Of a DNA stretch of 64,000 bases, positions 5,373 through 61,208 are shown one piece after another. Source of the DNA: Octopus bimaculoides (taxonomy: Eukaryota). Where the stretch lies: positions 64,012,165-64,076,164 of the forward strand of contig NC_068985.1 of assembly GCF_001194135.2 (NCBI RefSeq), given 5' to 3'. The notes beneath the pieces were generated by a model. It did not search any database. It saw nothing but the letters and a program-made list of their open reading frames with translations, and was not told where the DNA came from. Positions within the stretch are counted from its first letter, which is position 1, and each line of letters begins with the position of its first letter. Made by a program: the position numbers and the translations under genes.

Positions 5373-5405
5373 ACTTACCTGAAATTAAAGAACACTGTAT
5401 TTACA
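5373..5405 (-). promoter_or_regulatory. Candidate recursive splice site 2 (junction between 5379 and 5378)
   Basis: Minus strand reads gtaaatacagtgttctttaatttCAG|GTAAGTca, in apparently non-repetitive sequence. Confidence 0.55.
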
Positions 5406-7960: not shown

Positions 7961-7980
7961 GTCTTTCACCCTTTGATTGC

Positions 7981-8258: not shown

Positions 8259-8562
8259 CCTATCAAAGGGTAGAAGAGATCATGAGTAGTCAATGGCCAT
8301 CCAACAATATGTATATACATGCATGGGGACGTGGAAAAACCTGGGTTCGTGTCCAGATGTACAGTTGATCTACTGGGTGTTGGAGGCCCCTCTGTTGTCA
8401 CATCTCTCTAGGAGAGGGAAACACTGAGAGAAAACCTGCGGCACTGACAATATTTGATAATGTAGACTAGTTCTTTTTGAATTTATGTTGTCCAGGTTCA
8501 CAGAGTGGGGCTGGATTTGTGCAAATCCTTTCCCCACTATAAAAAAAAAATCATCATGCACA

Positions 8563-22167: not shown

Positions 22168-23668
22168 CACTGCAAACTGAGATAATAGTCCATGATGATT
22201 TTTTTTTAGATTTTCTAAATAACTACCCGAGGAATTTTGAAGATTTACAAGATAGTACAGTACACTATTTTTGGTTTGTATACAAAATTTATATGTAGCT
22301 GTCTTAGTTTCCATATTCTGATCACTTATAAAGATAGAAATACCAACTATTTCAAGAAGAATTATTTTAAATAACTCATATGACACAAATGAACCATTGA
22401 ACAACGAAATACATAAATAAAATTCACAGAAGCTTTGATTATGATTAGTGTTTGGTGTATGAACCATTTTGTTTGTTGACCTCAAAAATGCAGTTGTTAG
22501 TGGATTCAGTCAGTGTTTTGATAGTAGAGGGTAGGACTGCCTAAGCAGAGTCTTGTATTGCTTTCCCAAGTGTTTCCTTAGATGTGTACTACTTGCCATT
22601 CTGATAGATCTCACATTTGACGAAGCTCCAGAGGTTCTCTATGGGATTCAAATCTGGAGAACAGGCTGGCCACTTCATTAAAGTTTCTCCTTTGAATCTC
22701 AATGAGGAGAAGGTCTCTTCAGTTTTCTTAGCAGCATGTGGTGGGGCCTTATCATGCATAAAAATAACCTTGCTAAGCTCAGATAATGGGAGCTCATACA
22801 AGCCAGTAAGTTAGGACAACCCTAATAAAGTTACAGTATGTGATAGAATTAATCTTCACATCTTCCGGCACTTTAAATGGACCAATCATCCTGTCTCCCA
22901 TGATTCCAGCCCAAAACATGACTCCTCCACCCTCTTGCTGACAGTGCAAACACATGGGAGTGGGGTTGTCATAAAACACCCATCCCTTAGCCCAATCATC
23001 AGGACCATCTAGCATAGCTCAGCACTCGTCAGTGAACAAAATATGCTTGACATCGGTCTTCATATACATTCTACCCCATTCTAACTGAGCTTTTTTGTGT
23101 CTGGGAGTCAATAGAGGCTTGCATGTAGGTTTCTTTCTCAAAGCTACCAATTACTTTATTTCTGGTTGTTTTGGAGACATTTTCAATACCAGTATCTGCA
23201 AACAAAGCTTTACTAGTACATCCAAGATTTTTAAGTAAGCATCGCTTGAGATGGGAAATGTCTCATGCTGTGACTGTTCAGGACTTACCTTTATCACTGC
23301 ACTCATTCTGATACTTGGGATTTTGTAAATATTTGCGAACTGTTTTCACATGACAACCTAGTTTATTGACCACTTCATCTACAGACTTGCCTTTACCTAT
23401 TTCTTTTATAATCTGGTTCCTCTCATACCCTGTAAGATCTTTTTCATGCCCCATCTTTTGAAATCAATATTAGGACTTTTAATTCTGTTCAGCCAAAAAA
23501 GAAAATTGTTGATCAATATAAAAACTAAAAAAGCTAAAGGTACTAAATTTTGTGTACAAACCATAAATAGTGTACTGTATTATGATGTAAATTTTCTTCA
23601 AAATCCCTAGAGTAGTTATTTAGAAAATCTAAAAAAATCGTCATGAACTATTATCTCAGTTTCCAGTG
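22168..23668 (-). mobile_element. TRT-type Tc1-like element (DD37E), about 1.5 kb, pseudogenised
   Basis: About 125-bp TIRs (cactgcaaactgagataatag / ctattatctcagtttccagtg|TA). Motifs FTDE..MLDGPD.W.KGW, MHDKAP, WPACSPDLNPIE give 37 residues between D2 and E. Confidence 0.9.
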
Positions 23669-31302: not shown

Positions 31303-34300
31303 CCGTCATGGGAACCTGCGGCCCGCAAAGCTTTCTGAATGGCTGGCCTAAGTCAGTAAAGAAAAATATTCGCCATCATCAGACAACCGTATAATTTTCA
31401 ACATCCCTCAGAGTTGATCTACAACAATCCAAATATTCAAGAGAAGAATTAGCATCTCTACTCGGGACACTAATTCAACAAAAGAAAAGTATTGAGTTAA
31501 TGTTCAATTTCTGATTCCACTGCTTGTTATAATTCAGTGCCTGTAAATACACGTGGTATTCATGTAACATTGTCAAGCAGGATTAACGGAATTTTCAAAG
31601 TAAAAGTGTGCAAAGTGCTGTATTTTTAAACTTTAATTTTTGATGTCAAAGCTAATGGCTTCATCCAAAAAAAGAAAGATTTCTTAAGAAATAAGAAAAT
31701 TCCAGGAAAAGTGGACAAATGATTATTTATTTGTTGAAGCAAAAAATAAATAAATGTGTTTAATATGTTTTGAATCTGTCTCCGCTTTTAAAGAACTTAA
31801 TAGTAGGCAACATTACATTTCAAAATATTCAGGATATCATAAAAAATTGAATCCTTTAAGAAACAGATCGGCAGTCTAAATATACTCTTTTCCAAAAAGC
31901 AAACCAGACTAAAAGAAATAGTACATGTTAGCTATGTTGTTAGTGAAAAAGTGGCAAAACATTCAAAAAATTATTCCAACGGTGAATTTGTAAAAAGACT
32001 GTCTTTTGTCAGTGGCTGCAATTTTGTGTCTGGAAAAAGGTAGGTATGTTTCACAAGATTAGTTTGTCTTGCAGGACAATAAGAAGACAAGTTAAGGAAA
32101 TTGAAGCAGATATCGAGGGTACACTGACAGAAAAAATAAGAGACTTCGATTGTTTTTTTCACTGGCTATCAATGAAAGCTCAGTCATATCCAATTCAACT
32201 CAACTAGCAATTTTCATGCATGGTAATGATAAGTCATTTAATATCACAGAAGAATTGTTTAGTGTTCAGACAATGAAAGACACAGTTACAGGATATAAAA
32301 TTTATGAAGTAAAGAAAGCAGCCTTGAAGTTAAATCTCCCGCTTGAATGACTCGTCAGTGTAGCAACAGACGGGGCCCCAGCAATGGTTGGGTCTAAGAT
32401 AGGCTTTCTTGCCAAATTAAAAGAAGAATTAACTTTTTTGAATTTAACAAACAGTAACTTTGCAACGATTCATTGCATAATTTACCAAGAAAATCTATAC
32501 TCTTTTACTCGTCTCAGTCATTTGACTGTGGCCATGTTGGAGCACTGCCTTTAGTTGAGCAAATCGACCCCAGGACTTATTCTTTGTAAGCCTAGTACCT
32601 AGTCTATAGGTCTCTTTTACCGAACCGCTACATTACGGAGATGTAAACACACCAGCATCGGTTATCAAGCAATGTTGGGGGACAAACACAAACAGACACA
32701 TACATATATATATATACATATATACGACAAGCTTCTTTCAGTTTCCGTTTACCAAATCCACTCACAAGACTTTGGCTGGCCTGAGGCTATAGTAGAAGAC
32801 ACTTGTCCAAGGTGCCACGCAGTGTACGCCTATGTGCAAAGTCTCTAAAATTTGAGAATGTTATGCATGCAGTTGTTTCAAACATCTATTTTATAAAATC
32901 CTTGGCACTTAAACATTGCCAGTTCAAAGAGTTCTTAGAAGAATGTGAATCAGAATATGGTGACCTTGTTTACTTCAGTGTAGTTTGTTGGTTAAGTAAA
33001 GGGAAGATGCTTCAATGATTTTATAGCCTGAGAGAAAGGTAGATTTGTTCCAGAACTGAAAAGTGATAACTGGATTTGTGACCTTGTATTTCTCATGGAT
33101 ATAACTACACATTTAAATGATTTAAATTTAAAATTGCAAAAGCAAAATCAGTTAATTCACGAGATGTATTCTCATGTCAAAGCTTTTCAAACAAAACTTC
33201 AAATTTGGGAGAATCAACTCAGGACTGGTGATGCTTTCCATTTCCCTACACTAGCTATTCATGGATCGACATCTAGATATGACTTTGCTGTGGAGCTAAA
33301 TGAGCTGAAAAAAGAACTGAACACCAGATTTAACGACTTCAAAGCTAGGAAAGCTGATTTTAATCTTTTCAGAAAGCCTTTTAACGCTGATGTTGAAAAA
33401 GTTCTAAAGAAATTGCAAATGGATCTAATTGAATTTCAGAGTGATGAATTTCTTCAGCAAAAATTTAAAGAGGAATCTTTGATGCATTTTTATGAAACTG
33501 CCTGAAATTAGTGTGCTTTGCTAGAAGATATGCCACCATGTTTGGTAATTCATATAAATGTAAACAACACTTTACTAGACTGGAAATAATGAAGTCAAAA
33601 TCCAGGTCAACATTGACTGATATTCATCTGGAAGACAATTTATGGGTTGTAACATCACAAATTCCTGTAAATATTGAGAAACTCATAGAAAATGTACAAT
33701 ACCAGGTTTCTCATTAAAATTCGAGAGTAAATTATTCCTATTTACATCAATAATAAATGGATCTTACTTGTCTGTGTTTTGTTAAGCAGTGTTTTAGTTG
33801 AACTATTTTCCTCATCTATGCTGCTCTTTTTTTTGTTTTTGATTTTGGGTTGTTATACTTCAAGTCAAATGAATTTGTTTTTCAATTTCATTTTTGTTTT
33901 TTTAGTTTCTTTTCTTTAATCATAGATAGATAATGTGTAATGTTAAATGTATATAAAATTTTCATTGTATTAAATTGTTTATTTACATTTCTTAAGCATT
34001 TTCCTCAAGAACCATAGCTTGAAACGGTTCAACTAAACCACATACATAACAATGATTAGGTACGATATTTCTTGAATTTTGCAACCTTTCATTGAAAGTA
34101 AGGTTTTCAGTATTTAAAGTTTCAAAAACAAACATTCATAATAATTCTTTTCTCCACGGAAAGAGTTTTGGTGCTAATTTACATATCAGAATAATAAAAC
34201 CTACAATTAAATGAAAGTGATATCTTTGATATTTTTACCCCAGCTTTTCAGTTGTAATTTATCTTTCTATCATTTTTATGACCGAGGAAAACATGTACAA

Positions 34301-34444
34301 ATTCTGAAGAAACAAATCAAAACAACTTGAGTTACCGCCCTTTTTTTAAAATGTAGGCATGAATGTAAATTAGCACTTGCAGCCTGCCTGATTATGAATC
34401 ATATCTCATGTGGCTTGCTTCTCGAAAAAGGTTGCCCATGCTTG
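31303..34444 (+). mobile_element. hAT (Buster/SPIN/GTF2IRD2-like) DNA transposon, pseudogenised
   Basis: Perfect 8-bp TSD GTCTAAAG at 31295-31302 and 34445-34452. TIRs ccgtcatgggaacct / aggttgcccatgcttg. Motifs FSLAINES, ATDGAPAM, IHCIIYQE.LCAK, WLSKG, DIT.HLN.LN.KLQ, F...Y.C.Q.F. Confidence 0.95.
32498..32829 (-). mobile_element. SINE family B inserted in the hAT ORF
   Basis: Removing it restores QENL-CAKSL. Confidence 0.9.
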
Positions 34445-35210
34445 GTCTAAAGAATCTAGGATATTGAAATTATCCCACAAGATAACATTACAAATTTTAA
34501 TGTCACTAAGAGTGGTTATTAAATACAAAGGTTGGCTGAAACATGCATGGGCTGATTAAGACACTGATGGAATGTGACCAAATGAGGCTTATTTCTCAAC
34601 ATAGTTCCCCTTACAGTTCACACCATGACAGTGATGATGTTTTCATTTTGATATATTAGCCAGAAAACAAAGAAATTCAAAACCCTACACTTTTTATCAA
34701 AGCCTTCAAGACTGTTGAGGAAAAGTTTTCATGTTGACAGTGATTACAACAATGACAATAATGGCCTGAAATAAAAGGTCTATCATAAAATATACATGTT
34801 CAAATCATTTACAGATTAAAGCAATTTTTGACAGAACCGATAAAGGAAAACTTCATAGCTATCAGACTGTAAATTTTACAGATGTGGAATATATTGTTGT
34901 TGTTGTTGTACAAGTTATATTAGAGAGAGAGAGATGTCTAACATAAACACTCAATAAAATTATATTGGTCTTTGTAACATTAAGTTATAATCTATGCCAA
35001 TCTAAGTTGTGCATTTCATAAAATAAATATTGTTATAAAGAAAGACAAGCTGTTCAACAAAATGATTAAATAAAAATACTTTTCTTATCTTGCATATACC
35101 ATTTGTACCATAATAGACTGCAGCATGGATAAACCAGTGAATAAATCTGGACTCGTGATCACAAAGTGACTGCTATAACATATCCAGAGTTAGGAGTAAA
35201 AAGCAGGGTT

Positions 35211-35245
35211 ACTTACCTGAAAGAAAAACAAAAATAATTTAACAA
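35211..35245 (-). promoter_or_regulatory. Candidate recursive splice site 1 (3'ss/5'ss junction between 35217 and 35216)
   Basis: Minus strand reads ttgttaaattatttttgtttttctttCAG|GTAAGTaa, in apparently non-repetitive sequence. Confidence 0.65.
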
Positions 35246-35816
35246 CATAAATTATGAAACGAACAAGTAACATGATAGTTTGATGAAGTCTAATTCTTCA
35301 ACTGTCAACATTAAACTAATTCTTTAATATATTTCAAATGCCAAAAACTTTTATTCACACAAACTTTGTAAAATTTAAAGCCATTATTTACAATATTTTC
35401 ACTTTTTTTTTAGGTAATTAGGCAAAACAACTAAAAGTAGGAATGATCCAACAATCTGAGAAATATTAATTACATTTTCTAATCTTTCAATTTTGGAAAG
35501 TTTCTTAAAAAATAAATTAAACTATTGCTTACATTAGTTTAATTTCTGAAACAAATCTTCTAATAAATCAAGCCAATGTGGGTATATTGTAACAGTTTCC
35601 TATCTATTCAGTAGTACCTCAGCATCAATAAGGTAAGATTTAATAAAATTGTTTATTCCAGACTTCAAATGAAATATATTTTCCCCTCAAGCTACACAAG
35701 TTTCCCTCTTTATTTAAATACAACTTAAGCAGTGGTCATTCTACTTGAACAAGTGAAACTGTACTTTGTCCCCAGTAATTATTCTAGTGTTGGTAGTGAA
35801 AACAGTACACCAGTAA

Positions 35817-36415
35817 TTGTCATCGTTTAACGTCCGCTTTCCATGCTAGCATGGGTTGGACGATTTGACTGAGGACTGGTGAACCAGATGGCTACACCAG
35901 GCTCCAATCTGATTTGCCAGAGTTTCTACAGCTAGATGCCCTTCCTAACACCAACCACTCCGAGAATGTCGTGGGTGCTTTTACGTGCCACCAGCACAGT
36001 CAGGCGGTACTGGCAACAGCCACGCTCAAAATGGTGTATTTTACGTGCCAACTGCACAAGAGCCAGTCCAGCGGCACTGGCAACGATCTCGCTCGAATGN
36101 NNNNNNNNNTTACGTGCCAACTGCACAAGAGCCAGTCCAGCGGCACTGGCAACGATCTCGCTCGAATGTCTTTACATGTGCCACCAGCACAAGTGCCAGG
36201 AAGGCGACGCTGGAAATAGGTGCCATCACGATTTCGCTTACCCCAATAGGTCTTCGCAAGCCGAGTTTAGTGTCCAATGAAGGAGACGACGTTGACATGG
36301 GTGCCAGTTGTTGAATTTAGTCCGATTTCAATTTCACTTGCCTCAACAGGTCTTCGCAAGCGGAGTTTAGTGTCCAATGAAGGACAGAGGCCTTGGATTT
36401 AGGTCTCACTTGGCT
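35817..36415 (-). mobile_element. RTE 3' end (UTR plus (gat)n tail)
   Basis: Reverse complement of the tails at 51030-51590 and 60620-61170. Confidence 0.9.
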
Positions 36416-36443: not shown

Positions 36444-36911
36444 AGTGTAGTATATTGCCACTTAAGTGTGGCTGACCCCTAGGGGTGGATGTTACTGTTG
36501 CTTTTAGCCCCAGGAGGACATCTCCTCCAGCTGGCTTATCGACACACGACTGTGTCCTGTTTGCCAAGGGAAGTTATCCCTCTCACCTCGATCTGCAGCA
36601 CGAACGGATCCGGATTTCAGGGTTATTTCCCTTCGTCGGCGTTCGATAGCTGCTGACCTTGGCGAGAGAGACAAAAACCTGGCAATCTTATATCTTCTTT
36701 TCCAGTGAAATTCTTCACTGATATCGAAAAGGTGCTGAAATCCGGATCCGTTCGTGCTGCAGATCGAGGTGAGAGGGATAACTTCCCTTGGCAAACAGGA
36801 CACAGTCGTGTGTCGATAAGCCAGCTGGAGGAGATGTCCTCCTGGGGCTAAAAGCAACAGTAACATCCACCCCTAGGGGTCAGCCACACTTAAGTGGCAA
36901 TATACTACACT
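36444..36911. repeat. Perfect 177-bp inverted repeat with 114-bp spacer
   Basis: 36444-36620 is the exact reverse complement of 36735-36911 (base-by-base check by eye); termini AGTGTAG...CTACACT. Confidence 0.95.
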
Positions 36912-36989
36912 TTATCGTGCAGTTACTGTTAATACTTCATTTAGAGAATTAACATTGCTTATATATATATATATATATATAGATATATA

Positions 36990-39511
36990 CATGGAATTAC
37001 TGAAGAAAGAGATAGAAAAAAACTATAAGACTACCAACAGCAATATTCTACGGGAAGCTAACCTGGATGTTAAGGAAATTATGTTCGAATACAATCTGCA
37101 TGATAGGACTGAACCTATGGTCCCTAAGCAATCTCGGTTTGTTCTTAAGGACCATAAGATAAATTTTTGGTCCAACCCTTCTCTACGTCTTATTTGTCCC
37201 TCTAGGTCTGACTTAGGCATTCTTACCAAAAACGTTCTGGACAAATATATATACCCACTATAATTAATAAGTTAAAACTGAATCTTCGGTCTAATTCTTC
37301 TCAAGTAATAGATTGGTTTAATTCAATTAAAGATAAGAATAATACCAAATTTATACAGTTTGACATTTCTAGTTTCTATTCCTCTATTAACCCTATTATC
37401 CTTAACAAAGCGCTTTGGTTCGCAGGTCTTTCTAGGGATGAAATTAATGTAATTTTAGGGGCTCGTAAATCTATCATTAAATTTAACAATAAACTGTGGA
37501 TCTGTAAGGATACTCCGGAGGCTTTTGATGTTCCTATGGGAAGTTCGGACTCAGCTCAAATAGCTGATATGGTCTGTTCGTATTTATTGTATGAAATGGC
37601 AGACCAGTTCCCTAACATAAAGGGAGGTCTTTACAGGGACGATTGTCTGCTATACCTCCATAAGGCCTCTGCCTAGAGCATACAAAAAGTTTAAAATAGG
37701 TTAGCTAGATTCTTCAAAAGAATGGGCTTTGGCATCGTTTTTGAGGATGAGGTCTCTGTAGCAAACTTTCTAGACGTTACTTTAGACTTACATAGTAATA
37801 CTCACTTTCCCTTCCATAAACCGTCAACTAATCTCAAGTACATAAGCCCCTTTAGTAACCATCCAAGACATATAACCAGTAATTTGGTTAGGAATATCTC
37901 AATTAGGCTTTCCAAACTTTCCTCTAACTCCCAAATTTTCAATAAGGAGGCTGACTTCTATAATTCAGCCTTATTGAGGGCAGGTTATAAGGACAGGGTA
38001 GTGTACATCAACTCTTCTAGTGATCTTTCTCCTTCTACACAACATGATACCCCCTTTACTAGCGTAGATGAACCCATTTCTATTCCCTCCCATTCTTCTC
38101 ACTTTACTGAGAAAGTGGGTCATCCTTATCACTCACATAAGGTGTGTCCCAACTGGCTCTAAACACTTTAACAAATTCAAAAATCTTTGTTTATTTAACC
38201 ACACTAATACTGTATCTAGATCTGTTGATGATAATAATATCTGGCTCATCCTCCCGTTTGGGAAGCAGGTTAAATCAAATTTGGTCCGGCAGTTCCGAGA
38301 CGCGGTGAGTAGGAACTTCCCTATAGGTTCCCACTATTACCCAATAATCAACTCGCATAAGGTTAGATTCGGGTTTTCCAACACTAAAAATTTGGTACAG
38401 ATTATATCTTCCCATAATCTCTGGTTTTTAGATTCTTCTCTAGACGGCCATCCTAGATATGATCGTAATATTAGTAATGTTCATACCTGTAACAATAATA
38501 ATTGCTCCAATAATTTAACGCACACAAATGATGGCATTAGTCATTCAGATATTAATATGGGTAGTATGTACAATATTAGGAATCATAAAAATATCTGTAA
38601 CAATAATAAGATTAGCAATAAGATTAGCATCTTGGAATTAAATCATAATAGAATTAAGTTTTTAAGTGCGAATGCAAGGACCAAGAATGTAGTTTACCAA
38701 TGCAAAGTAACGTCTCATGCTGATGTCTCGTTTTACTTAGGTAGTTCATCGACGCAGGTCTCCAAGAGAATTTCGAATCATTATTCGTCATTTAGGGATA
38801 GGAATAAAGCTAGCACCACCGGTCTAAGTAAATTTATTTGGGAACTGAAAGATTGCAATAAGCAATTCTCTTTGGAATGGTCTATACTGGCTACCTCAGT
38901 TCCCTATGACAAAGGTAAGGATTTTTGTCCTCTTTGTGACTTGGAACTTTTCTATATCCTGTTCTCCAAGAATCGCCTAGTTAACCAAATAACTCAGAGG
39001 GCGTATCGTTGTCAGCACTTCAAGAAACATACCTTCTTTTATTACCGTTAACTCCTACATTCCAACTAGGTTAGGTTTTAAGCATTATTTTTTTTTTTAT
39101 TATTATTATTTTTTTCTCACTAAATGTCCTCTGAATAATATCTACTTCTACATCCACTGTAACTTGTCTTTTATTTCCCCCTTCTATAGTTGATTAAGTA
39201 ATTTCCTTCCCAGTAATGCTACTTGAGTTGCTTTGTACCACTAGTTGCTTTGCCTTATATCCAACCTTCTCTTTATAAGCACGAATACTGTTGTTATTAT
39301 TATAATTTCTCAACAAAATATCCTGTACCTCGTTTTTCTATTGATTAGCGCTAACATCAGTATATTAATATATCACAGGGTAATGCTGTTTCATTTATCA
39401 TGTTTACATTCTTCGGTTCAAATCAGTATGTTATTAATCTTAATATTTTTAATATAATCTTAAACAAAACATATATGTATATATATATGTGTGTGTGTAT
39501 GTATGTGTGTG

Positions 39512-40599: not shown

Positions 40600-41698
40600 G
40601 AAGTTAAATTGGACACTAAACTCCACTTGCAAAGACCTATTGAGGCAAGTGAAATTGAAATTGAGTTAAATTGGACACTAAACTCCACTTGCGAAGACCT
40701 GTTGAGGCAAGTGAAATCGAAATCGAATTAAATTGGATACTAAACTTCACTTGTGAAGACATGTCGAGGAAAGTGAAATCGAAATCGAGTTAAATTCGAC
40801 GACTGGCACCCATGCCAACGTCGTCTCCTTCATTGGGATATGAAACTCAGCTTGCGAAGACTTATTGGGGCAAGCGAAAGTGAAATCGTGATGGCACCTG
40901 TACCCAGCGTCGCCTTTCTGGCACTTGTGCCTGCAGCATGTGTAAGGACTTTCGAGCGAGATCGCTGCAAGTGCCCCTAGACTGGCGCTTGTGCGGGTGG
41001 CACATAAAATACACCATTTTGAGCGTGGCCGTTGCCAGTTCCGCCTGACTGGCCTTCGTGCGGATGGTACGTAAAAGCACCCACTACACTCTCTGAGTGG
41101 TTGGCATTTAGGAAAGGCATCCAGCCGTAGAAACTCTGCCAAATGCTGTGTGTGAGAAGACTCGGCAAGCTAAGTGAGACCTAAATCTAAGGCCTCAGCC
41201 AGTCCACTTATGCGTACCTTCCTTCATTGGACACCAAACTCCACTTGCGAAGACCTGTTGAGGCAAGTGAAATCGAAATCGAGTTAAATTGGACACTAAA
41301 CTCCACTTGCGAAGGCCTGCTGAGGCAAGTGAAATCGAAATCGAGTTAAATTGGATGACTGGCACCCATGCCAACATCGTCTCCTTCATTGGACACGAAA
41401 CTCAGCTTGCGAAGACTTATTGGGACAAGCGAAAGCGAAATTGTGATGGCACCTATGCCCAGCATCACCTTTCTGGCACTTGTGCCAGCTGCATGTCTAA
41501 GGACTTTCAAGTAAGATCGTTGCCAGTGCCCCTGGACTGGCTCTTGTGCGGGTGGCACATAAAATACACCATTTTGAGCGTGGCCGTTGCCAGTACCGCC
41601 TGACTGGCCTTCATGCCGGTGGCACTTAAATGCACCCTCTACACTCTCTGAGTGGTTGACGTTAGGAAGGGCATCCAGCTGTATAAACTCTGCCAAAT
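40600..41698 (+). mobile_element. Two tandem RTE 3' ends with about 62-bp internal tandem units
   Basis: ttggacactaaactccacttgcgaagacctgttgaggcaagtgaaatcgaaatcgagttaaa occurs three times from about 40609 and twice from about 41228. Confidence 0.88.
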
Positions 41699-42251
41699 NN
41701 NNNNNNNNNNNNNNNNNNNNNNNNNNNNNNNNNNNNNNNNNNNNNNNNNNNNNNNNNNNNNNNNNNNNNNNNNNNNNNNNNNNNNNNNNNNNNNNNNNNN
41801 NNNNNNNNNNNNNNNNNNNNNNNNNNNNNNNNNNNNNNNNNNNNNNNNNNNNNNNNNNNNNNNNNNNNNNNNNNNNNNNNNNNNNNNNNNNNNNNNNNNN
41901 NNNNNNNNNNNNNNNNNNNNNNNNNNNNNNNNNNNNNNNNNNNNNNNNNNNNNNNNNNNNNNNNNNNNNNNNNNNNNNNNNNNNNNNNNNNNNNNNNNNN
42001 NNNNNNNNNNNNNNNNNNNNNNNNNNNNNNNNNNNNNNNNNNNNNNNNNNNNNNNNNNNNNNNNNNNNNNNNNNNNNNNNNNNNNNNNNNNNNNNNNNNN
42101 NNNNNNNNNNNNNNNNNNNNNNNNNNNNNNNNNNNNNNNNNNNNNNNNNNNNNNNNNNNNNNNNNNNNNNNNNNNNNNNNNNNNNNNNNNNNNNNNNNNN
42201 NNNNNNNNNNNNNNNNNNNNNNNNNNNNNNNNNNNNNNNNNNNNNNNNNNN
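41699..42251. other. Assembly gap (N run); other gaps near 27.1k, 36.1k, 42.9k, 49.1k, 52.3-52.9k, 54.3-54.45k and 55.2k
   Basis: N characters; ORF-track entries made of X are artefacts. Confidence 0.99.
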
Positions 42252-43125
42252 CAAAATGGTCCTCTTCCATGTCTGCTTCGGGCATCCTTGCTTCCTTTAC
42301 CCCTGTGGGTTCCAGTCAAGTGCTTGTCGTGTTACATTTGAGGGTTCTTTCCGCAGTGTGTGTCCGATCCATCTCCATTTCCTTTGTCTAATCTAAACAT
42401 GTATGGGCTCCTGGTTGGCCCTTTCCCACAAGTCGGTGTTTGGCACTTTGGCGAACTACTTCAGATGGAGGATCTGCCAGAGACATTTGTTGATGAAGGT
42501 TTGGATCTTCTTGTAGTTGCTGCAGGTGGCTCTCCAGGTTTCAGAGCCATACAAAAGCACAGATTTTAAGTTTGAACTAAATAAGCGGAGTTTAGTTTGA
42601 GTTGAGATGGCAGTGGACTTCCATACCGGCCAAAGAATAGCGAAAACTTGCCAGGTCTTCTTGCTTCTTGCAGTGATGTCCTTGTCTGATCCACCTGGTT
42701 TGCTGATCTTGCTGCCAGGATAGACAAACTCACTAACGTCCTCCACTGGTTTCCCCTCGATTGTGGTTGGCTCTTCCTGCTTGTTGTTGATACGTAGCAC
42801 TTTTGTCTTTTCCTGGCTGATCCTCAAGCCCACTCGCCGTGAAGTTTCTCTCTGGTGGTCTACCTTATCTTGCATGTCTTGCAGGCGATGTGACAGNNNN
42901 NNNNNNTCTGGTGGTCTACCTTATCTTGCATGTCTTGCAGGCGATGTGACAGTAGCACGAGATCATCTGCGTAGTCCAAGTCCTTCAGCTTGTTCATCAG
43001 TGTCCACTAAATACCTTCCCTGGAGGTAGCATAGGCCGTCCTGGTGACCCATTCCAGCACGACGAGGAACAGGAGCGGTGACAACAAACAGCCCTGACAG
43101 ACTCCCATGCTGACTCTGACTATTC
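42252..43125 (-). mobile_element. RTE-clade LINE RT C-terminal fragment (second family)
   Basis: GLRISQEKTKV, FVY.GS.I...GG...DI..R, KSVLLYGSETW, and a W.P.G.R..G-like C-terminus. Confidence 0.88.
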
Positions 43126-48679: not shown

Positions 48680-49050
48680 GAAGATCACATGTAATGTGCT
48701 TACTAAGACCAAATTGTTATCAAATGGAATTTAGCGATGTAACAAAAACATATTTGGGCAAGACAAGTGAAAATTACATAAAAAAATACAATTATCTGCA
48801 AACTAGTTTCGAAATTAAAATTTTCTTACCGAAAATATCTGTTTCTCATCAGTACAGACCATTGAATAAGTACAATTTACAGAATCGCATACTAGTTGCA
48901 TGCCACAAGTGGAGAACGTGTACACGGTTCTGTTAAATTATACTTATGGTAAGATTCGAAAGTCTTTGTTTTTGCGCGCAAAATCCGGAAATATCTCCGC
49001 AGAAAAAGGTTTCCATATCGAATATACCAACATAAATAACTCCATTTATT
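48680..49050 (+). mobile_element. Decayed PLE GIY-YIG fragment
   Basis: TKTYLGKTSENYIKKYNY..TSF. Confidence 0.55.
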
Positions 49051-49177
49051 TAATCTTATATATATATATATATATATANNNNNNNNNNNNNNNNNNNNNN
49101 NNNNNNNNNNNNNNNNNNNNNNNNNNNNNNNNNNNNNNNNNNNNNNNNNNNNNNNNNNNNNNNNNNNNNNNNNNNNN

Positions 49178-51590
49178 NGGCTGGTGTAAAGTCCCCTCTC
49201 GACCCAAAGTAACATGGTGGTGGAACAAGGGGGTAGACAGGGTTATTAAAATAAAGAAACGGGCTTGGAAGGACTGGAAGAACGGTGGGAGCAGGGAATT
49301 GTATCAGACTGCCAGAAGGGAAGCTAGGCGACAGGTTTATTTAACTAGAGGGCAAGCACATAAGAAAAAATTTGCCAATGTTCTGCGCCGTAACGACCAA
49401 ACACTTGAAGTATTTCGTGTTGCAAGGCAGTGTGTGCAAGAGAACCATGATGTTGTAGGAGAGAAATGTTTTCACATGGATGATGGTACACTTGCACTAA
49501 ACGAGGCTGCAAAGAAAGAGGTTTCGAGACGCCACTACGAAAGATTGCTCAATAAAGAGAATGAATGGGAGAAAGAGAGTCTGCTGAATGTTGATAAAGC
49601 AATTAAGAGTATGAAAACAGGGAAAGCCTTCGGCCCATCAGGAAACACTGCAGAGATGCTCAAAATATTTGGCAGTGTCAGCTATAGCCTAGTCACCTGT
49701 ATTGCTAACCAGGTGATACACGAAGGAGTCATATCCAATGACTGGTGTAGCAGCACCATTATTAACTGCTACAAAGGTAAAGGTGACGCTTTAGATACAA
49801 ATAATTACAGAGGTATCAAATTGTTAGTAATGAAAGTCACGGAGAGGGTCTTAGCCCAACTAATTAGGGAGCAAGTTAGTTTAGATGAGATGCAGTTTGG
49901 GTTTGTGCCAGGGAAAAGCACCACTGATCCTATATTTCTGGTAAGACAGCTGCAGGAGAAATACCTAGCCAAGGATAAACCTCTGTACCTGGCTTTCGTT
50001 GACATGGAGAAAGCCTTTGACAGGGTCCCCCGATCCTTTATCTGGTGGTCAATGAGGAAACTCGGTATAAAAGAATGGTTAGTGATGACCATGCACTAAT
50101 TGCTGAGTCACTATCAGAACTAGAGGAGAAATTTCAAGTGTTGAAGCAGGGACTAGAATCGAAGGGCCTTGGAGTCAACCTAGCTAAAACCAAAGTCCTA
50201 ATAAGTAGGAAGGTAGACAAAACACAAACCCCTTCAGGTAGATGGCCCTGCTCGATCTGTAGAAAAGGTGTAGGTAGAAACTCTATAAGATGTACCCAGT
50301 GCAAGCTGTGGACACATAAGAGGTGCAGCAATATCAAAGGCAGGTTAACTAGGAAGTTAGTTTTTGTATGTGGCAGATGTTCAGGTGCAATAAACACTGT
50401 AAATATGCAGAAAACAACTTCTGTCTCATTCCAGGGAGGAAAACTATATATAGTTGATAGCTTCCACCATCTGGATGACCAAGTTAGTAGTGGGGGAGGG
50501 TGCGCTGAAAGTGTAGCTGCTAGAATAAGAATAGCCTGGGCAAAGTTCAGAGAGCTCTTACCTCTGCTGGCTACAAAGGGACTCTCACTCAGAGTAAAAG
50601 GCAGACTGTATGACACATGTGTACAAACAGCCATGCTACATGGCAGTGAGACATGGGCCGTGACTGCTGAGTACATTCGTAAGCTCGAAAAGAATGAAGC
50701 CAGTATGCTCCGATTGATGTGTAATGTCAGTGTGCATACTCGACAGAGTGTAAGCACCTTGAGAGATAAGTTGAACCTAAGAAGCATCAGTTGCAGTGTG
50801 CAAGAGAGACGATTTCGCTGGTATGGTCACGTGGCGAGGATGGATGAGGATAGCTGTGTGAAAAAGTGCCACACCCTAGCAGTTGAGAGAACCTGTGGAA
50901 GAGGCAGGCCCAGGAAGACCTGGGATGAGGTGGTGAGGCACAACCTTCAAACATTGGGCCTCAATGAGACGATGACTTCTGACCGAGACCTTTGGAAATA
51001 TGCTGCGCTTGAGAAGAGCCGGCAAGCCAAGTAAGACCTAAATTCAAGGCCTCTGCGAGGGATGTAGGCAGCCCACTTACGCGTAACATTCCTTCATTGG
51101 ACACTAAACTCTGCTTGCGAAGACCTGTTGAAGCAAGTGAAATCGAAATCGAACTAAATTCGACGACTGGCCCCCATACCAACGTCTCCTTCATTGGACA
51201 CTAAACTTAGCTTGCGAAGACCTGTTGGGGCATGTGAAAGTGAAATTGTGAGGGCACCACCGTTCGAGCATGATTGTTACCAGCGTTGTCTTCCTGGCAC
51301 TAGTGCCAGTGGCACCTGAAAAATCATTCGAGCGAGATCGTTACCAGTGCCGCTGGACTGGTTCTTGTGCAGGTGGCACATAAAATACACCATTTTGAGC
51401 ATGACCGTTGCCAGTACCGCCTGAGTGGCCTTCTCGGAGTGGTTGGCTTTAGGAAGGCCTTCCAGCTGTAGAAACTCTGCCAAATCAGATTGGAGCCTGG
51501 TGTAGCCATCTGGTTTCACCAATCCTCAGTCAAATCGTCCAACCCATGCTAGCATGGAAAGCGGACGTTAAACGATGATGATGATGATAT
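49178..51590 (+). mobile_element. RTE LINE copy 1 (internally deleted) with 3' UTR and (gat)n tail
   Basis: RT motifs NYRGIKLL, QFGF.PGKST.D.IF, AFVDMEKAFDRVP. The GV.QGS-YA segment is deleted near 50075. Cys-rich insert; ends ...gcggacgttaaacgatgatgatg. Confidence 0.95.
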
Positions 51591-55090: not shown

Positions 55091-55306
55091 TCCTTATCAG
55101 CTCACACAAAAAGTATATTAGAATTTTTTTAAACATTTTATCCAAGAGACATCGAGAAAAGAAGAGGGGGAATTGACCGCGCATACACACNNNNNNNNNN
55201 ATAACACATACACATTTTTTGACAAGGACTTTCGGGATATGGAAATCCTTTTCTAATGAGTATATTTCGGTCTTTGAGTAATGTAGTGGAGATAAGAAAT
55301 ACTCAC

Positions 55307-55361
55307 GTTCTTTTTCGTGATCATATCCAACAACGACGAAGTAGTCAGCCAGACGAGACAT
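55307..55361 (-). CDS. SBF2: First coding exon of SET-binding factor / myotubularin-related pseudophosphatase (SBF2/MTMR13-like, N-terminal uDENN start)
   Basis: The minus strand reads ATG TCT CGT CTG GCT GAC TAC TTC GTC GTT GTT GGA TAT GAT CAC GAA AAA GAA C|GTGAGT, i.e. MSRLADYFVVVGYDHEKE. This matches the recalled SBF1/SBF2/Sbf N-terminus (M[AS]RLADYF[IV]VVGYD). The coding length is 55 nt with a phase-1 GTGAGT donor at 55306-55301, and an in-frame TAG lies upstream. Invertebrates usually have one Sbf gene, so SBF1 vs SBF2 naming is nominal. Confidence 0.92.
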
Positions 55362-55419: not shown

Positions 55420-55810
55420 CTTGTTGCTACTACTGATACTATTGCCGCTGATGCCGGGGGGAGGCGATACTACTGCACTATTACTGCTACTACCAGGGTT
55501 TCTACTGCACTGTTACTGCCGCTGCTACCATGGGTTCGACTGCATTACTACTGCTATCAGGGGTTCTACTGCTGCTTATAAAAATGTTGCTAATGTTGAT
55601 GCTACAATTAGAGATACTACAAATGCTGCTACTAAGGATATACAGCACTACTGCTGCTATTGATGCTGATGATGATGACAGACACTGCACTACAGCTGAT
55701 AGTACTGAAGATACTACTTATGTTATTAATGATGCTACAGTTGCAGTTACTACAACTGCTGCTGCTGACTTACTGACTGTCAGTATTATTACTGCCGCTA
55801 CTGACTGTAA
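55420..55810. repeat. Degenerate (CTA/CTG/GAT)n low-complexity tract upstream of exon 1
   Basis: Runs of ctactactg/gctgct/gatgat; the ORF-track hits here are low-complexity artefacts. Confidence 0.7.
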
Positions 55811-55899
55811 AAGGTTTCGATGGAATCGACTGTTCGTTGACGCTAGAGATACACATACACAGGGACATACCTATATACACATACACATGAACATATACA

Positions 55900-56870: not shown

Positions 56871-57289
56871 CCAGGTAACCTTGTACTTCCTCTACAGCAA
56901 AACACCTGTTTCTCTCTCTGTCTTACTATAACCTTTCATCATCCGACACAAGATCACCTCCTCCAATGCCCCCTCCCCTCTTGAAAGGTTTTTTTTTGTC
57001 TTGCAAATACTTGGTGACCCTGTCAGTACAGGTGTCGGTGTTTGGAAGGACAACCAGCTGTAAAAACCTTGTCAAAACTGACCTCGCTTGTGCTTGTGCC
57101 GCATAAAAAGCACTAATTCCACTCTGCGGAGTAGTTGGTGTTAGGAAGGACATTCAGCTGTAGAAATATTGTCAAAACAGTCACAGAAATCTGGTGCAGG
57201 CTTCTGCCTGGCCAGCTCTTGTGAAACCGTCCTACCCATGCTAGCATGGAAGGTGAACGGTAAACAATGATGATGATGAAGGCATTGAT

Positions 57290-57620
57290 TGGCCCAGGGC
57301 TATTGTAAAAGACACTTACCCAAGGTGTTACACAGTGGGATTGAATCCAAAATCATGTGGTTGCAAGGCAAGCTTCTTTACAACATAACTATGACTGTGC
57401 CTTTATCTTATTTTTTATCTATTACTGTTTCAGTCATGAGACTGTGGCCATGCTGGGGCACCACCTTAAAGAGTTTTTAGTTCAACAATTCCATCCCAGT
57501 ACTTATTTTTTTAATCCTGATACTTATTCTATTGATCTTTCTGCCAAACTGCCAAGTGATGGAGACATAAACAAACCAGCACCAATTGTCAAACAGTGAT
57601 AGGGGACAAACACATATACA
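57290..57620 (-). mobile_element. SINE family B (rearranged pieces)
   Basis: gacactt.cccaagg and gtttcagtcatgagactgtggccatgctgg motifs. Confidence 0.75.
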
Positions 57621-57624
57621 TACA

Positions 57625-60600
57625 TACAGGTACAAGATTTTCTGGGAAGGGAACACAGACGGGGTTGGGGGCATGGGTATACTTCTTGCAGAGAAATGGG
57701 TGGATAAGATAATCGAGGTAGCCAGAGTATGGGATAGAATACTTAAGATTAGATTAGTCCATCACCATGGGTTAGCAACCATTATCTCGGTCTATGCCCC
57801 TCAGCCCAGGCTACCCGATGGACAGAAAGATCGATTTTATAACGCCCTCTTGCAGACTACCTCATCAACGAATGACAGGGACCTTCCCTTTGTGGCTGGT
57901 GACTTCAATGGTCATGTTGGACAACATTCAGGGGCTTCCATGGTGTACATGGAGGTTATGGTTTTGGTTCCCGCAATGAGGAGGGAACCAGGCTGCTGGA
58001 GGTCTGTGATGCAAATGACCTTACGGTTTGCAATACTAACTTCAGGAAACCTGCCAGTCACCTAGTCACCTACCGTTCTGGCAGACACACTAGCCAAAAG
58101 GGAAAGATGGCTGCTTATAAATGCCAAAACCTTCCCAGGTGAAGAATGTACCCCACAACATAGACTAGTAGTTAGTGACTTCAGGATCAGGGCTAGGTGG
58201 TTGCCCAGAAGACGACCAGCATGGAGGAGAAGGGTCTGGAAGCTTAAAGATCCTGCAAATGGACAGAGATTTAGAGACATGTTACTCGAAGCCTTCGATG
58301 AAATAGAAGGGGATGTAGCATCATATAATGTGGAAGACAACTGGACGTTTCTACGGGACAACCTGCTGAGGGCCACTGACCAGATTTGTGGATGGTGCAA
58401 AGTCCCCTCTCAACCCAAAATAATGTGGTGGTGGAACAATGTAGCTGACAGGGCTATTAGACTAAAGAAACAAGCTTGGAAGGACTGAAAGAACGGTGGT
58501 AGCAGAGAATTGTATCAGACTGCCAGAAGGGAAGCTAAGCGACAGGTTTACTTAGCCAGAGGGGAAGCAGATAATAAAAAATTTGCCAATGTTCTGCACC
58601 ATGAGGACCAAAGACTCGAAGTATTTCGTGTTGCAAGACAGTGTGTGAGAGAGAATCGTGATGTCATGGGAAAGAAATGTGTTTGCATGGATGATGGTAC
58701 ATTTGCACTAAATGAGGCTGCAAAGAGAGAGATTTGGAGACACCACTACGAAAGATTGCTCAATAAAGAGAATGAATGGGAGAAAGGGAGTCTGCCAAAT
58801 GTCAACCCAACAGAGGGACCAGCTATCCAAGTTGACAGTACCATGGTAGATAACGCAATTAAGAGTATGAAGACAGGGAAAAACCCCCGGCCCATCAGGA
58901 ATCACTGCAGAAATGCTCAAAATATTTGGTAGTATTGGCTACAGCCTAGTCACCCGTATTGTTAACCAGGTGATACATGAAGGAGTCATACCCAATGACT
59001 GGTGGAGCAACACCATAGTTAACTTCTACAAAAGTAAAGATACATATAATTACAGAGGTATCATGTTGTTAGATCAGGTAATGAAAGTCACGGAGAGGGT
59101 CATAGCCCAACTAATTAGGGAGCAAGTTAGTTTAGATGAGATGCAGTTTGGGTTCATGCCACGGAAATGCACCACTGATGCTATATTTCTAGTAACACAG
59201 CTGCAGGAGAAATACTTAGTGAAAGATAAACCTCTCTACCTGGCTTTCATTGACATAGAGAAAGCCTTTGACATGGTCCCCCGATCTCTTATCTGGTGGT
59301 CAATGAGGCAACTCGGGATAGAAGAATGGTTAGTGAGAGCTGTGGGAGCCATGTACAGAGACGCTGTCAGTAAGGTAAGGGTTGGCAATGAGTACAGTGA
59401 AGAATTCCAGGTAGAGGTAGGGGTCCACCAAGGTTCTGTCCTCAGCCTCCTCCTATTTATTATAGTCCTCCAGGTGATAACAGAGGAATTTAAGACAGGA
59501 TGCCCCTGGGAGCTCCTCTATGCTGATGACCTTGTACTAATTGCTGAGTCACTATCAGAACTAGAGGATAAGTTTCAGATGTGGAAGCAAGGACTAGAAT
59601 CGAAGGGTCTTGGAGTCAACCTAACTAAAGCCAAAGTCCTGATAAGTAGGAAGGTAGAAAAGATACAAACACCTTCAGGAATATGGCCCTGCTCGATCTG
59701 TAGAAAAGGTGTAGGTAGAAACTCTATAAGATGTACCCAGTGCAAGCTGTGGACACATAAGAGGTGCAGCAATATCAAAGGCAGGTTAACTAGGAAGTTA
59801 GTTTTTGTTTGTGGCAGATGTTCAGGTGCAATAAACACTGTAAATATGCAGAAAACAACTTCTGTCTCATTCCAGGGAGGAAAACTAGACATAGTTGACA
59901 GCTTCCGCTATCTGGATGGCCAAGTTAGTAGTGGGGGAGGGTGCGCTGAAAGTGTAGCTGCTAGAATAAGAATAGCCTGGGCAAAGTTCAGAGAGCTCTT
60001 ACCTCTGCTAGTGACAAAGGGTCTCTCTCTCAAAGTAAAAGGCAGACTGTATGACACATGTGTATGAACAGCCATACTACATGGCAGTAAGACATGGGCC
60101 GTGACTGCTGAGTACATGCGTAAGCTCGAAAGGAATGAAGCCAGTATGCTCCGATGGATGTGTAATGTCAGTGATGTGGCAAGAATGGATGAGGATATGC
60201 TGGCAGAAACGTTAGCACGCTGGGCGAAATGCTTAGCGGTATTTCGTCTGCTGCTACATTCTGAGTTCAAATTCCGTCGAGGTCGACTTTGCCTTTCATC
60301 CTCTCGGGGTCGATTAAATAAGTACCAGTTACGCACTGGGGTCGATATAATCGACTTAATCCCTTTGCCTGTCCTTGTTTGTCCCCTCTGTGTGTAGCCC
60401 TTTGTGGGCAGTAAAGAGATAAGAATGGATGAGGATAGCTGTGTGAAAAAGTGCCACACCCTAGCAGTTGAGAGAACCTGTGGAAGAGGCAGGCCCAGGA
60501 AGACCTGGGATGAGGTGGTGAGGCACGACCTTCAAACATTGGGCCTCACCGAGATGATGACTTCTGACCAAGACCTTTGGAAATATGCTGTGCGTGAGAA

Positions 60601-61170
60601 GAGCCGGCAAGCCAAGTGAGACCTAAATCCAAGGCCTCTGCCAGGGGTGTAGCCAGCCCACTTATGTGTACCTTCCTTCATTGGACACTAAACTCCTCTT
60701 GCCAAGACTTGTCGAGGCAAGTGAAATCGAAATCGAACTAAATTTGATGACTGGCACCCATGCCAACGTTTTCTCCTTCATTGGACACTAAACTTGGCTT
60801 GCGAAGACCTATTGGGGCAAGCGAAAGCGAAATCATGATGGCACCTGTGCCCAGCGTCGCCTTCCTGACACATATAAAGACATTCGAGTGAGATCATTGC
60901 CGGTGCCGCTGGACTGGCTCCTGTGCAGGTGGCACCTAAATTACACCATTTTGAGCGTGGCCATTGCCGTTACCGCTTGACTGGCCTTTGTGCCGGTGGC
61001 ATGTAAAAGCACCCACTACACTCTTGGAGTGGTTGGCATTAGGAAGGGCAACCAGCTGTAGAAACTCTTCTAAATCAGATTGGAGCCTGGTGTAGCCATC
61101 TGGTTCACCAGTCCTCAGTCAAATCGTCCAACCCATGCTAGCATGGAAAGCGGACATTAAACGATGACGA
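57625..61170 (+). mobile_element. RTE LINE copy 2 (APE C-part plus RT plus 3' UTR), pseudogenised
   Basis: ISVYAP, VAGDFNGHVG, GVHQGSVLS, ELLYADDL and the (gat)n tail; frameshifts present. Confidence 0.95.
60198..60420 (+). mobile_element. SINE family A inserted in RTE copy 2
   Basis: 17-bp TSD AAGAATGGATGAGGATA at 60181-60197 and 60421-60437. Confidence 0.95.
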
Positions 61171-61208
61171 TATATGGTGCATAGGTGCAAAGCAGTGTTT
61201 AGGTATGA

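What the first reader, a model, noticed from the sequence alone, without database searches (positions are those of the whole stretch)
35211..35245. Candidate recursive splice site (ratchet point) 20 kb into SBF intron 1
Seen: on the transcribed strand a very strong acceptor (ttatttttgtttttctttCAG) is followed directly by a perfect donor (GTAAGT), with no exon between. Joining exon 1 to it gives C+GTAAGTAA = CGT AAG TAA, so retention as an RS-exon (next plausible donor ATG|GTATAT at 35100/35099, 117 nt) would introduce an immediate stop. Known: AG|GT recursive sites process very long introns in Drosophila and in long vertebrate neuronal genes. Inference: this octopus intron is removed stepwise; I am not aware of recursive splicing being described in cephalopods.
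Basis: partly seen in the sequence, partly recalled or inferred. Interest (0 to 1): 0.82.

Follow-up and report, generated by a model that had tools for sequence, protein, structure and literature searches.

The report
Candidate recursive splice site, octopus Sbf
About 20 kb into the very long first intron of an octopus Sbf (myotubularin-related 5/13) gene, a strong splice acceptor sits directly against a perfect splice donor. This looks like the "ratchet points" flies use to remove long introns in steps, but nothing here shows that the cell uses it.

Summary
On the minus (transcribed) strand the window reads ...ttatttttgtttttctttCAG|GTAAGTaa, with the junction between 35217 and 35216. It lies 20,090 nt downstream of a confirmed Sbf/MTMR5/13 exon 1, whose last base is 55307. 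Exon 2 is not in the window, so the intron is longer than 55 kb.

It is the best juxtaposed acceptor/donor of both strands. Markov simulations and a model-free count expect only about 0.001-0.006 such sites per 62-kb strand. It also has TT at -5/-6, branch-point-like TTTAT at -32 and a 71-nt AG-free zone. After ligation to exon 1 it regenerates a donor as good as the natural one.

Three things count against it or remain open. No convincing downstream "RS-exon" donor exists. No orthologous cephalopod intron could be reached to test conservation. No RNA data could be consulted. How common recursive splicing is in cephalopods is unknown: it is frequent in flies and rare in mouse.

Verdict: a credible, above-chance, motif-only candidate. 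I put about 0.45 on it being a real recursive splice site and 0.35 on a chance, largely unused motif. If real, it is a new member of a known kind in an unsampled phylum. Interest is moderate (0.36).

The parts
55307..55361 (-). Coding part of Sbf/MTMR5/13 exon 1 (MSRLADYFVVVGYDHEKE plus the first base of the next codon; the exon ends in phase 1)
   Evidence: Sequence. tblastn to Sbf N-termini gives E of 1e-7 to 5e-7. N-termini of homologues are listed.
55301..55306 (-). Natural 5' splice site of intron 1 (AAC|GTGAGT, 7.9 bits)
   Evidence: Three read-through ORFs (P0147, P0148, P0167) diverge after DKE/EKE and resume at the GSG...QRFPEKDW block, so the intron position appears shared.
35219..35289 (-). 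AG-free zone upstream of the candidate acceptor (previous AG at 35291-35290; AG-to-AG distance 73)
   Evidence: The distance is in the top 1.8 % of all sense-strand AG gaps. About 5 % of pyrimidine-rich AGs have a gap this long.
35247..35258 (-). Branch-point-like motifs: TTTAT (A at 35248, position -32) and TTCAT (A at 35255, position -39)
   Evidence: which numbers positions with the G of the AG as 0; here they are renumbered with that G as -1. Fly ratchet-point branch points lie at -36 to -21 with a peak at -30. This is a sequence match only.
35219..35236 (-). Polypyrimidine tract plus C at -3 (16 of 18 pyrimidines; TT at -5/-6)
   Evidence: The acceptor ranks 3rd of 3214 sense-strand intronic AGs.
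35211..35218 (-). Candidate ratchet point AG|GTAAGT (junction between 35217 and 35216). After ligation to exon 1 it would give AAC|GTAAGT, 7.4 bits
35094..35216 (-). Hypothetical cryptic RS-exon (35216-35100, 117 nt, reads R K stop with the carried C) with a weak donor ATG|GTATAT at 35099-35094
   Evidence: The donor scores 2.6 bits and is the best within 400 nt, so this part is weakly supported.
5373..5384 (-). Second sense-strand TTTCAG|GTAAGT, 29,837 nt further into the intron; a possible second ratchet point with a poor acceptor
   Evidence: The pattern TTNCAGGTAAGT has 2 hits, both on the sense strand, against 0.04 expected. However, there is an AG 16 nt upstream and the acceptor scores only 5.9 bits.

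Best explanation
The site is a recursive splice site (ratchet point) in intron 1 of an octopus Sbf/MTMR5/13 gene.

Inferred mechanism:
1. As RNA polymerase passes 35.2 kb, U2AF and U2 recognise the T-rich tract and a branch point near -32.
2. The exon 1 donor (AAC|GTGAGT, 55306) is spliced to the AG at 35217, releasing a 20,090-nt lariat.
3. The ligated RNA reads ...GAAC|GTAAGTAA, which is again a functional 5' splice site (seven contiguous intronic positions complementary to U1).
4. That donor is spliced onward to exon 2, which lies beyond the window, or first to a further site such as 5379.

The mRNA is identical to that of one-step splicing. If the downstream sequence were retained instead, the frame would stop after two codons.

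Shown: the motif, its position, its rarity and the regenerated donor. Inferred: every step of actual use.
For: - The motif is present exactly as described.
- It lies on the sense strand of a first intron longer than 55 kb. Exon 1 is confirmed and exon 2 is absent from the window.
- It is the best AG|GT of both strands.
- Only 0.001-0.006 sites this good are expected per strand from Markov models, and 0.0036 from a model-free count.
- The acceptor is 3rd of 3214 intronic AGs and the donor is one of only 3 scoring at least 12 bits.
- TT at -5/-6 matches 99.5 % of fly ratchet points.
- TTTAT has its A at -32, and fly branch points peak at -30.
- The AG-to-AG distance of 73 is in the top 1.8 %.
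- The 20.1-kb first segment compares with a fly mean of 18 kb and a range of 2.6-63.6 kb.
- Mouse sites lie in introns longer than 51 kb, and 75 % are in first introns.
- The regenerated donor scores 7.4 bits against 7.9 for the natural one.
- The site is single-copy in the window and has no TIR/MITE structure around it.
- A second TTTCAG|GTAAGT is also on the sense strand and none is on the antisense strand.
Against: - There is no RNA evidence of any kind.
- Conservation is untested because no cephalopod orthologue could be fetched.
- Current models require a cryptic RS-exon with its own downstream donor. Here the best donor within 400 nt is ATG|GTATAT at 2.6 bits.
- In mouse brain fewer than 0.06 % of long introns use recursive splicing. 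If cephalopods are vertebrate-like, chance motifs could outnumber real sites genome-wide: at 0.004-0.006 per 62 kb, a multi-gigabase genome would hold hundreds by chance.
- The PWMs are generic, not octopus-trained.
- The second site (5379) has an upstream AG at -17 and a weak tract, so it adds little.
Confidence: 0.45

Rival explanations
1. Chance juxtaposition. An AT-rich intron longer than 55 kb happens to place GTAAGT after a T-rich ...CAG. The site is ignored by the spliceosome, or used only sporadically as splicing noise, and is not under selection.
For: - The 8-mer alone is expected about once per strand.
- The looser pattern YYYYNYAGGTRAGT is expected 0.18 times per window, and 16 of 100 shuffles have at least one.
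- At 0.004-0.006 per 62 kb, a genome of a few Gb would contain hundreds of equally good chance sites.
- There is no supporting RS-exon donor.
- Defined-site recursive splicing is rare in mouse.
- The finding was selected by a reader looking for striking motifs.
Against: - The full site is in the top 0.1-1.6 % of simulated strands.
- It additionally carries an AG-free zone (about 5 % of comparable acceptors) and a well-placed branch-point-like motif.
- It is on the sense strand, in a first intron, at a typical distance from the exon.
- 63 % of fly introns longer than 40 kb do have such sites.
Confidence: 0.35
2. The acceptor is the 5' end of a real but unannotated cassette or poison exon. The exon would run from 35216 to a downstream donor, be included in some transcripts and, because of the immediate stop (R K stop), trigger nonsense-mediated decay or give a truncated product. 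The adjacent GTAAGT would then act as the skipping switch of an expressed RS-exon.
For: - Strong acceptor features.
- An in-frame stop after two codons.
- Expressed RS-exons are the common outcome in mammals, and in the mouse screen 46 of 84 RS candidates were unannotated exons.
Against: - The downstream donors are all weak (no more than 2.6 bits within 400 nt), whereas GTAAGT at the acceptor scores 12.6. Donor competition would therefore favour skipping.
- There is no coding potential.
Confidence: 0.1
3. GTAAGT is the ordinary donor of an unannotated upstream exon ending ...TTTCAG. This could be an alternative non-coding first exon of Sbf or an exon of another same-strand transcript. Alternatively, the signals were brought in by an unrecognised transposable element.
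For: - The window is full of transposable elements and repeats.
- Exon-final CAG followed by GTAAGT is the donor consensus.
- One of the three AGGTAAGT sites (23289) lies inside a transposase-like ORF.
Against: - The 18 nt before the AG are a T-rich acceptor-type tract, and the preceding 71 nt contain no AG. This is typical of a 3' splice site, not of exon sequence.
- The two upstream ATGs I checked by eye in the sequence would reach the junction in phase 0 or 2, not the phase 1 needed to join exon 2.
- The region 34200-35800 is single-copy in the window and has no terminal inverted repeats.
Confidence: 0.07

Closest known systems
Drosophila intronic ratchet points (zero-nucleotide recursive splice sites; Ubx, kuz, osp, fz; Burnette 2005, Duff 2015, Pai 2018)
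   Same: - A juxtaposed strong 3' and 5' splice site, (Y)nTTNCAG|GTAAGT, on the sense strand of an intron much longer than 10 kb.
- TT at -5/-6.
- A first segment of about 20 kb.
- The site regenerates a donor after ligation.
- The downstream sequence is out of frame or stop-containing.
   Different: - Fly sites are defined by junction reads, sawtooth coverage, lariats and strong conservation. None of these is available here.
- Fly sites are associated with a short cryptic RS-exon (about 50 nt) bounded by a recognisable donor. Here that donor is very weak.
- The host is a lophotrochozoan with a far larger genome.
Vertebrate recursive splice sites with RS-exons in long neuronal genes (Sibley 2015 as summarised in PMC8605326; mouse catalogue PMC8797253)
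   Same: AGGTAAGT plus a pyrimidine tract, in a first intron longer than 51 kb of a long gene. Retention of the RS-exon would introduce a premature stop.
   Different: Vertebrate sites are few (9-20 well-supported), deeply conserved and dependent on exon definition by a downstream donor. Neither conservation nor a good downstream donor is shown here. Sbf/SBF2 does not occur together with 'recursive splicing' in any paper of the searched library.
Cryptic or poison exons and stochastic intronic splice sites
   Same: A strong intronic acceptor whose use would insert a stop codon. Many strong intronic motifs are used at low level or not at all.
   Different: A perfect donor abuts the acceptor with zero intervening nucleotides. 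This is the specific hallmark of recursive sites and is expected only about 0.004 times per strand of this window.

Membership tests
Recursive splice site / ratchet point | [quoted passage not shown] | tested here: met
   ttatttttgtttttctttCAG|GTAAGT on the minus strand. It is the top-scoring AG|GT of both strands.
Recursive splice site / ratchet point | Location inside a long intron (fly: longer than 11 kb, mean 45 kb; mouse: longer than 51 kb, mostly first introns), with segments of 2.6-64 kb | tested here: met
   Intron 1 is longer than 55.3 kb because exon 2 is not in the window. The first segment is 20,090 nt.
Recursive splice site / ratchet point | TT at positions -5 and -6 of the acceptor (99.5 % of fly ratchet points) | tested here: met
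   ...ctTTcag. This rule is established only for Drosophila.
Recursive splice site / ratchet point | Ligation to the upstream exon regenerates a competent 5' splice site | tested here: met
   AAC|GTAAGT scores 7.4 bits against 7.9 for the natural AAC|GTGAGT. In silico only.
Recursive splice site / ratchet point | Branch point 21-36 nt upstream of the AG | tested here: inconclusive
   TTTAT has its A at -32 and TTCAT at -39, with an AG-to-AG distance of 73. The motif match is cheap in AT-rich DNA, and no lariat data exist.
Recursive splice site / ratchet point | Cryptic RS-exon bounded by a downstream donor that is weaker than the ratchet-point donor (exon definition) | tested here: inconclusive
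   The only candidates are ATG|GTATAT at +117 (2.6 bits) and TAA|GTAACC at +4 (2.0 bits). Nothing reaches 5 bits within 400 nt. The candidates are weaker than the ratchet-point donor, as the model requires, but perhaps too weak to define an exon.
Recursive splice site / ratchet point | Sequence conservation of the AG|GT core and tract above the flanking intron in related species | not testable with these tools
   - No cephalopod Sbf protein or locus was retrievable.
- Window ORFs are not on record.
- An exact 24-mer scan of metagenome contigs found nothing.
- The O. vulgaris assembly is in the collection but can only be reached by an exact protein sequence.
Recursive splice site / ratchet point | Exon-to-site junction reads, sawtooth intronic coverage and recursive lariats in total or nascent RNA | not testable with these tools
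   No RNA-seq access.
Recursive splice site / ratchet point | Sense-strand excess of such motifs over antisense and over chance | tested here: inconclusive
   In this window TTNCAGGTAAGT is 2 sense and 0 antisense against 0.04 expected. AGGTAAGT is 3 against 0. The numbers are too small, and one site is inside a transposon.
Sbf / MTMR5 / MTMR13 gene (host gene) | N-terminal uDENN start MxRLADYFVVVGYDHEKE followed by an intron at the shared position | tested here: met
   The 18 exon-encoded residues match the Photinus protein P0037 exactly. Three read-through ORFs place an intron at the same position. The rest of the gene is outside the window, so the full domain architecture was not seen.

The most novel reading that the evidence does not exclude
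Cephalopods use fly-type, hard-wired ratchet points to remove their very long introns stepwise, and this Sbf site is one of them. That would be the first recursive splice site outside insects and vertebrates. It would argue that zero-length-exon recursive splicing is either ancestral to bilaterians or arises repeatedly whenever introns expand.
Probability: 0.3. Interest if true: 0.55.

Novelty: new member of a known kind. Interest (0 to 1): 0.36.

Why it matters
According to the papers read here, recursive splicing has been documented in Drosophila, mammals and lungfish. Cephalopods independently evolved large genomes, very long introns and complex nervous systems. No paper in the searched library links recursive splicing to cephalopods.

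A validated ratchet point in octopus would extend the mechanism to Lophotrochozoa. It would also give a concrete locus for asking whether long-intron processing in cephalopods is fly-like (most introns longer than 40 kb) or vertebrate-like (a handful of sites).

By itself, one motif is only a lead. Its main value is a cheap, specific, testable prediction: a junction from 55307 to 35216.

Tried and rejected
1. Exon 2 in the window. I searched with motif scans and with tblastn of seven Sbf N-terminal proteins. Only exon 1 is present.
2. Cephalopod Sbf proteins as a route to orthologous loci. Two homologue searches (one with a human-like N-terminus written from memory, one with a gastropod-based hybrid) returned only proteins shorter than about 600 aa, and none named as cephalopod.
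3. Window ORFs as handles for the source contig or Logan contigs. The mariner, 327-aa and RT ORFs are not on record.
4. An exact 24-mer scan of metagenome contigs found 0 hits.
5. The third homologue search, with the LINE RT, confirmed octopus affinity: O. vulgaris 78 % and O. bimaculoides 81 %. It gave one 20.9-kb O. vulgaris locus, which is too little for an empirical genome-wide null. That locus has no comparable site.
6. Transposon origin of the site was rejected for lack of any repeat or TIR.
7. No Rfam or tRNA features are in the window.
8. The reading "donor of an upstream coding alternative first exon" was rejected on phase. The two upstream ATGs I checked by eye in the sequence end in phase 0 or 2.
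9. Site 5379 as independent support was downgraded because of an AG at -17 and a weak tract.
10. Site 8211 lies inside a foldback repeat. Site 23289 lies inside a transposase-like ORF with no pyrimidine tract.
11. Burnette 2005 and Sibley 2015 are not held in the library. They are cited only through papers that summarise them.

Full report
**Observation**

The minus strand of the window at 35260-35201 reads gtttcataatttatgttgttaaattatttttgtttttctttcag|gtaagtaaccctgctt. Sixteen of the 18 nt before the AG are pyrimidines, with C at -3 and TT at -5/-6.

**Host gene and intron**

At 55361-55307 (minus) the window encodes MSRLADYFVVVGYDHEKE plus one further base, followed by GTGAGT.
- This is the canonical N-terminus of Sbf/MTMR5/MTMR13 (uDENN). 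The 18 exon-encoded residues match the firefly protein P0037 exactly, and tblastn gives E of 1e-7 to 5e-7.
- Three read-through ORFs (P0147, P0148, P0167) diverge after DKE/EKE and resume at GSG...QRFPEKDW. The intron position therefore appears to be shared.
- Neither motif scans nor tblastn find exon 2 or any later Sbf exon in the 55 kb downstream. Intron 1 is therefore longer than 55.3 kb, unless exon 2 hides in one of the N gaps, the largest being 553 and 640 nt.
- The candidate lies 20,090 nt into the intron.
- The window is octopod. Its LINE reverse transcriptase is most similar among named hits to Octopus vulgaris (78 %) and O. bimaculoides (81 %) proteins. A repeat motif that recurs in the window is also found in an O. 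vulgaris chromosome segment.

**Is it more than chance?**

- The 8-mer AGGTAAGT alone is not remarkable. About one is expected per strand, and three are seen on the minus strand and none on the plus strand.
- One of the three (23289) lies in a Tc1/mariner-like ORF with no pyrimidine tract.
- I scored every AG|GT with generic metazoan acceptor and donor weight matrices. These were written from general knowledge, not trained on octopus. 35217 is the best site of both strands (13.0 + 12.6 = 25.6 bits). The runner-up (23.8) sits in a CT microsatellite on the other strand.
- Among 3214 sense-strand intronic AGs its acceptor ranks third. Only three sense-strand GTs reach 12 bits as donors.
- I simulated 1000 strands of 62.5 kb for each of Markov orders 1, 3 and 5. 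A site matching both scores appeared in 0.1-0.6 % of strands, and the summed score was reached in 0.4-1.6 %.
- A model-free estimate agrees. Twelve acceptors with at least 15/18 pyrimidines and C at -3, times the observed frequency of GTAAGT, gives 0.0036 expected coincidences.
- A looser pattern (YYYYNYAGGTRAGT) is not rare: 0.18 expected per window.

The site is therefore locally unusual at roughly the 0.5 % level. At that rate a genome of a few gigabases would still contain hundreds of equally good chance sites.

**Further anatomy**

- The nearest upstream AG is 73 nt away. This is in the top 1.8 % of all AG-to-AG gaps, and only about 5 % of pyrimidine-rich AGs have a gap this long. It is the AG-exclusion pattern expected of a used 3' splice site.
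- yUnAy-type motifs lie at -32 (TTTAT) and -39 (TTCAT). Fly ratchet-point branch points map at -36 to -21, peaking at -30.
- After ligation to exon 1 the junction would read AAC|GTAAGT. This scores 7.4 bits against 7.9 for the natural donor AAC|GTGAGT.
- The region 34200-35800 has no other copy in the window and no terminal-inverted-repeat structure. A SINE-like repeat starts only at 35808.

**The weak point**

Current models for both flies and vertebrates hold that a ratchet point is first recognised as a short cryptic RS-exon (about 50 nt in flies) bounded by its own donor, which is weaker than the ratchet-point donor. Nothing reaches 5 bits. This does not refute the site, but it removes one expected support.

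**A second motif**

TTNCAGGTAAGT occurs twice, both on the sense strand (35217 and 5379, 29.8 kb apart), against 0.04 expected for both strands. The flanks are unrelated, and 5379 is single-copy. However, 5379 has an AG 16 nt upstream and a short tract (acceptor 5.9 bits). It is therefore only weak independent support.

**Comparison with known systems**

The site meets the published sequence and position criteria of Drosophila ratchet points:
- AG|GT with strong flanking motifs.
- TT at -5/-6, seen in 99.5 % of fly sites.
- Host introns of 11-133 kb.
- Segments averaging 18 kb.

It also matches the mouse sites, which have AGGTAAGT plus a pyrimidine tract, lie in introns longer than 51 kb, and are in first introns in 75 % of cases.

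The defining functional criteria could not be tested. These are junction reads, sawtooth coverage, lariats and cross-species conservation. No RNA data are accessible. Every route to orthologous cephalopod intron DNA failed.

**Weighing**

The posterior depends on an unknown base rate.
- In flies, 63 % of introns longer than 40 kb carry a high-confidence site. Under that regime a sense-strand motif this strong would almost certainly be real.
- In mouse brain, fewer than 0.06 % of long introns do. Under that regime chance motifs are comparable to, or outnumber, true sites.

I give 0.45 to a genuinely used recursive site and 0.35 to a chance, essentially unused motif. I give 0.10 to the acceptor of an expressed cassette or poison (RS-)exon, and about 0.07 to an ordinary donor of an unannotated exon or a transposon-borne signal.

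**Novelty**

No paper in the held library combines 'recursive splicing' with 'octopus'. The one paper that also contains 'cephalopod' has both terms only in its reference list. No paper combines 'recursive splicing' with SBF2. If validated, this would be a new member of a known kind in an unsampled phylum. As it stands it is a good, specific, cheaply testable lead rather than a discovery.

Noticed in passing
window 5373-5384 (-): A second TTTCAG|GTAAGT on the sense strand, 29.8 kb further into the same intron. The core is identical, but the acceptor is weak (AG 16 nt upstream, short tract). The flanks are unrelated to those of the first site.
   Followed up: partly
window 7959-8280: A long inverted repeat (arms 7986-8109 and 8128-8251, 124 nt, 86 % complementary, 18-nt loop, with extension to 7959/8280), next to a (TG/CA)n tract. 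It looks like a foldback or MITE-like element. It carries the second-best sense-strand AG|GT (CACCAG|GTAAGC at 8211).
   Followed up: partly
window 23289-23455 (-): The third AGGTAAGT lies inside an ORF (MGHEKDLTGYERNQIIKEIGKGKSVDEVVNKLGCHVKTVRKYLQNPK...) that looks like the helix-turn-helix N-terminus of a Tc1/mariner transposase. This was judged by eye only.
   Followed up: no
window 6366-7259 (-): Mariner-type transposase remnants (Pfam Transposase_1 and DDE_3 hits) in the sense orientation within the intron.
   Followed up: partly
window 57571-60064 (+) and 48870-51031 (+): Two copies of a LINE-like element, one upstream of Sbf exon 1 and one inside intron 1. The upstream copy has RVT_1 and PHD-finger Pfam hits; the one ORF scanned from the intronic copy (50021-51031) has the PHD hit only. 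The best named hits are Octopus vulgaris and O. bimaculoides proteins. A protein labelled as coming from a 'Herbaspirillum sp.' MAG (P0168) is 71 % identical, which suggests animal DNA contamination in that MAG.
   Followed up: partly
window 35808-36311, 40918-41698, 51293-51578, 57089-57270, 60866-61179, 63306-63955: A SINE-like or LINE-tail repeat family with at least six copies in the window (72-88 % identity). The motif CGCTGGACTGG..TGTGCAGGTGGCAC, which recurs in the window at 51372 and 60928, also occurs in the O. vulgaris locus L001.
   Followed up: partly
window 36877-39048 (+): Another retroelement fragment (weak RVT_1 hit at 37212-37673) plus a 327-aa ATG-started ORF (38068-39051) with no Pfam match. 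It lies antisense to Sbf, 2-4 kb upstream of the candidate site.
   Followed up: no
window 55470-55572: A 35-nt unit repeated 3.2 times (74 % matches) about 110-210 nt 5' of the Sbf start codon. It sits within a longer AGC/AGT-rich low-complexity stretch (55450-55830) in the presumed 5' UTR or promoter.
   Followed up: no
whole window, both strands: The hexamer GTAAGT is more frequent on the sense strand (19) than on the antisense strand (8). The numbers are small and I have no explanation.
   Followed up: no
proteins P0147, P0148, P0167 (Logan/NCBI contigs of unnamed organisms): ORFs called on these contigs read straight through a short intron placed exactly after ...DH(D/E)KE. The Sbf intron-1 position therefore appears to be shared with other organisms. 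In those it is tens of nucleotides long, against more than 55 kb here.
   Followed up: partly
window 42459-42896 (-): An ORF fragment with a Pfam DUF6451 hit (E 5e-14), flanked by assembly gaps (41699-42251 and 42897-42906). It is probably part of another retroelement.
   Followed up: no
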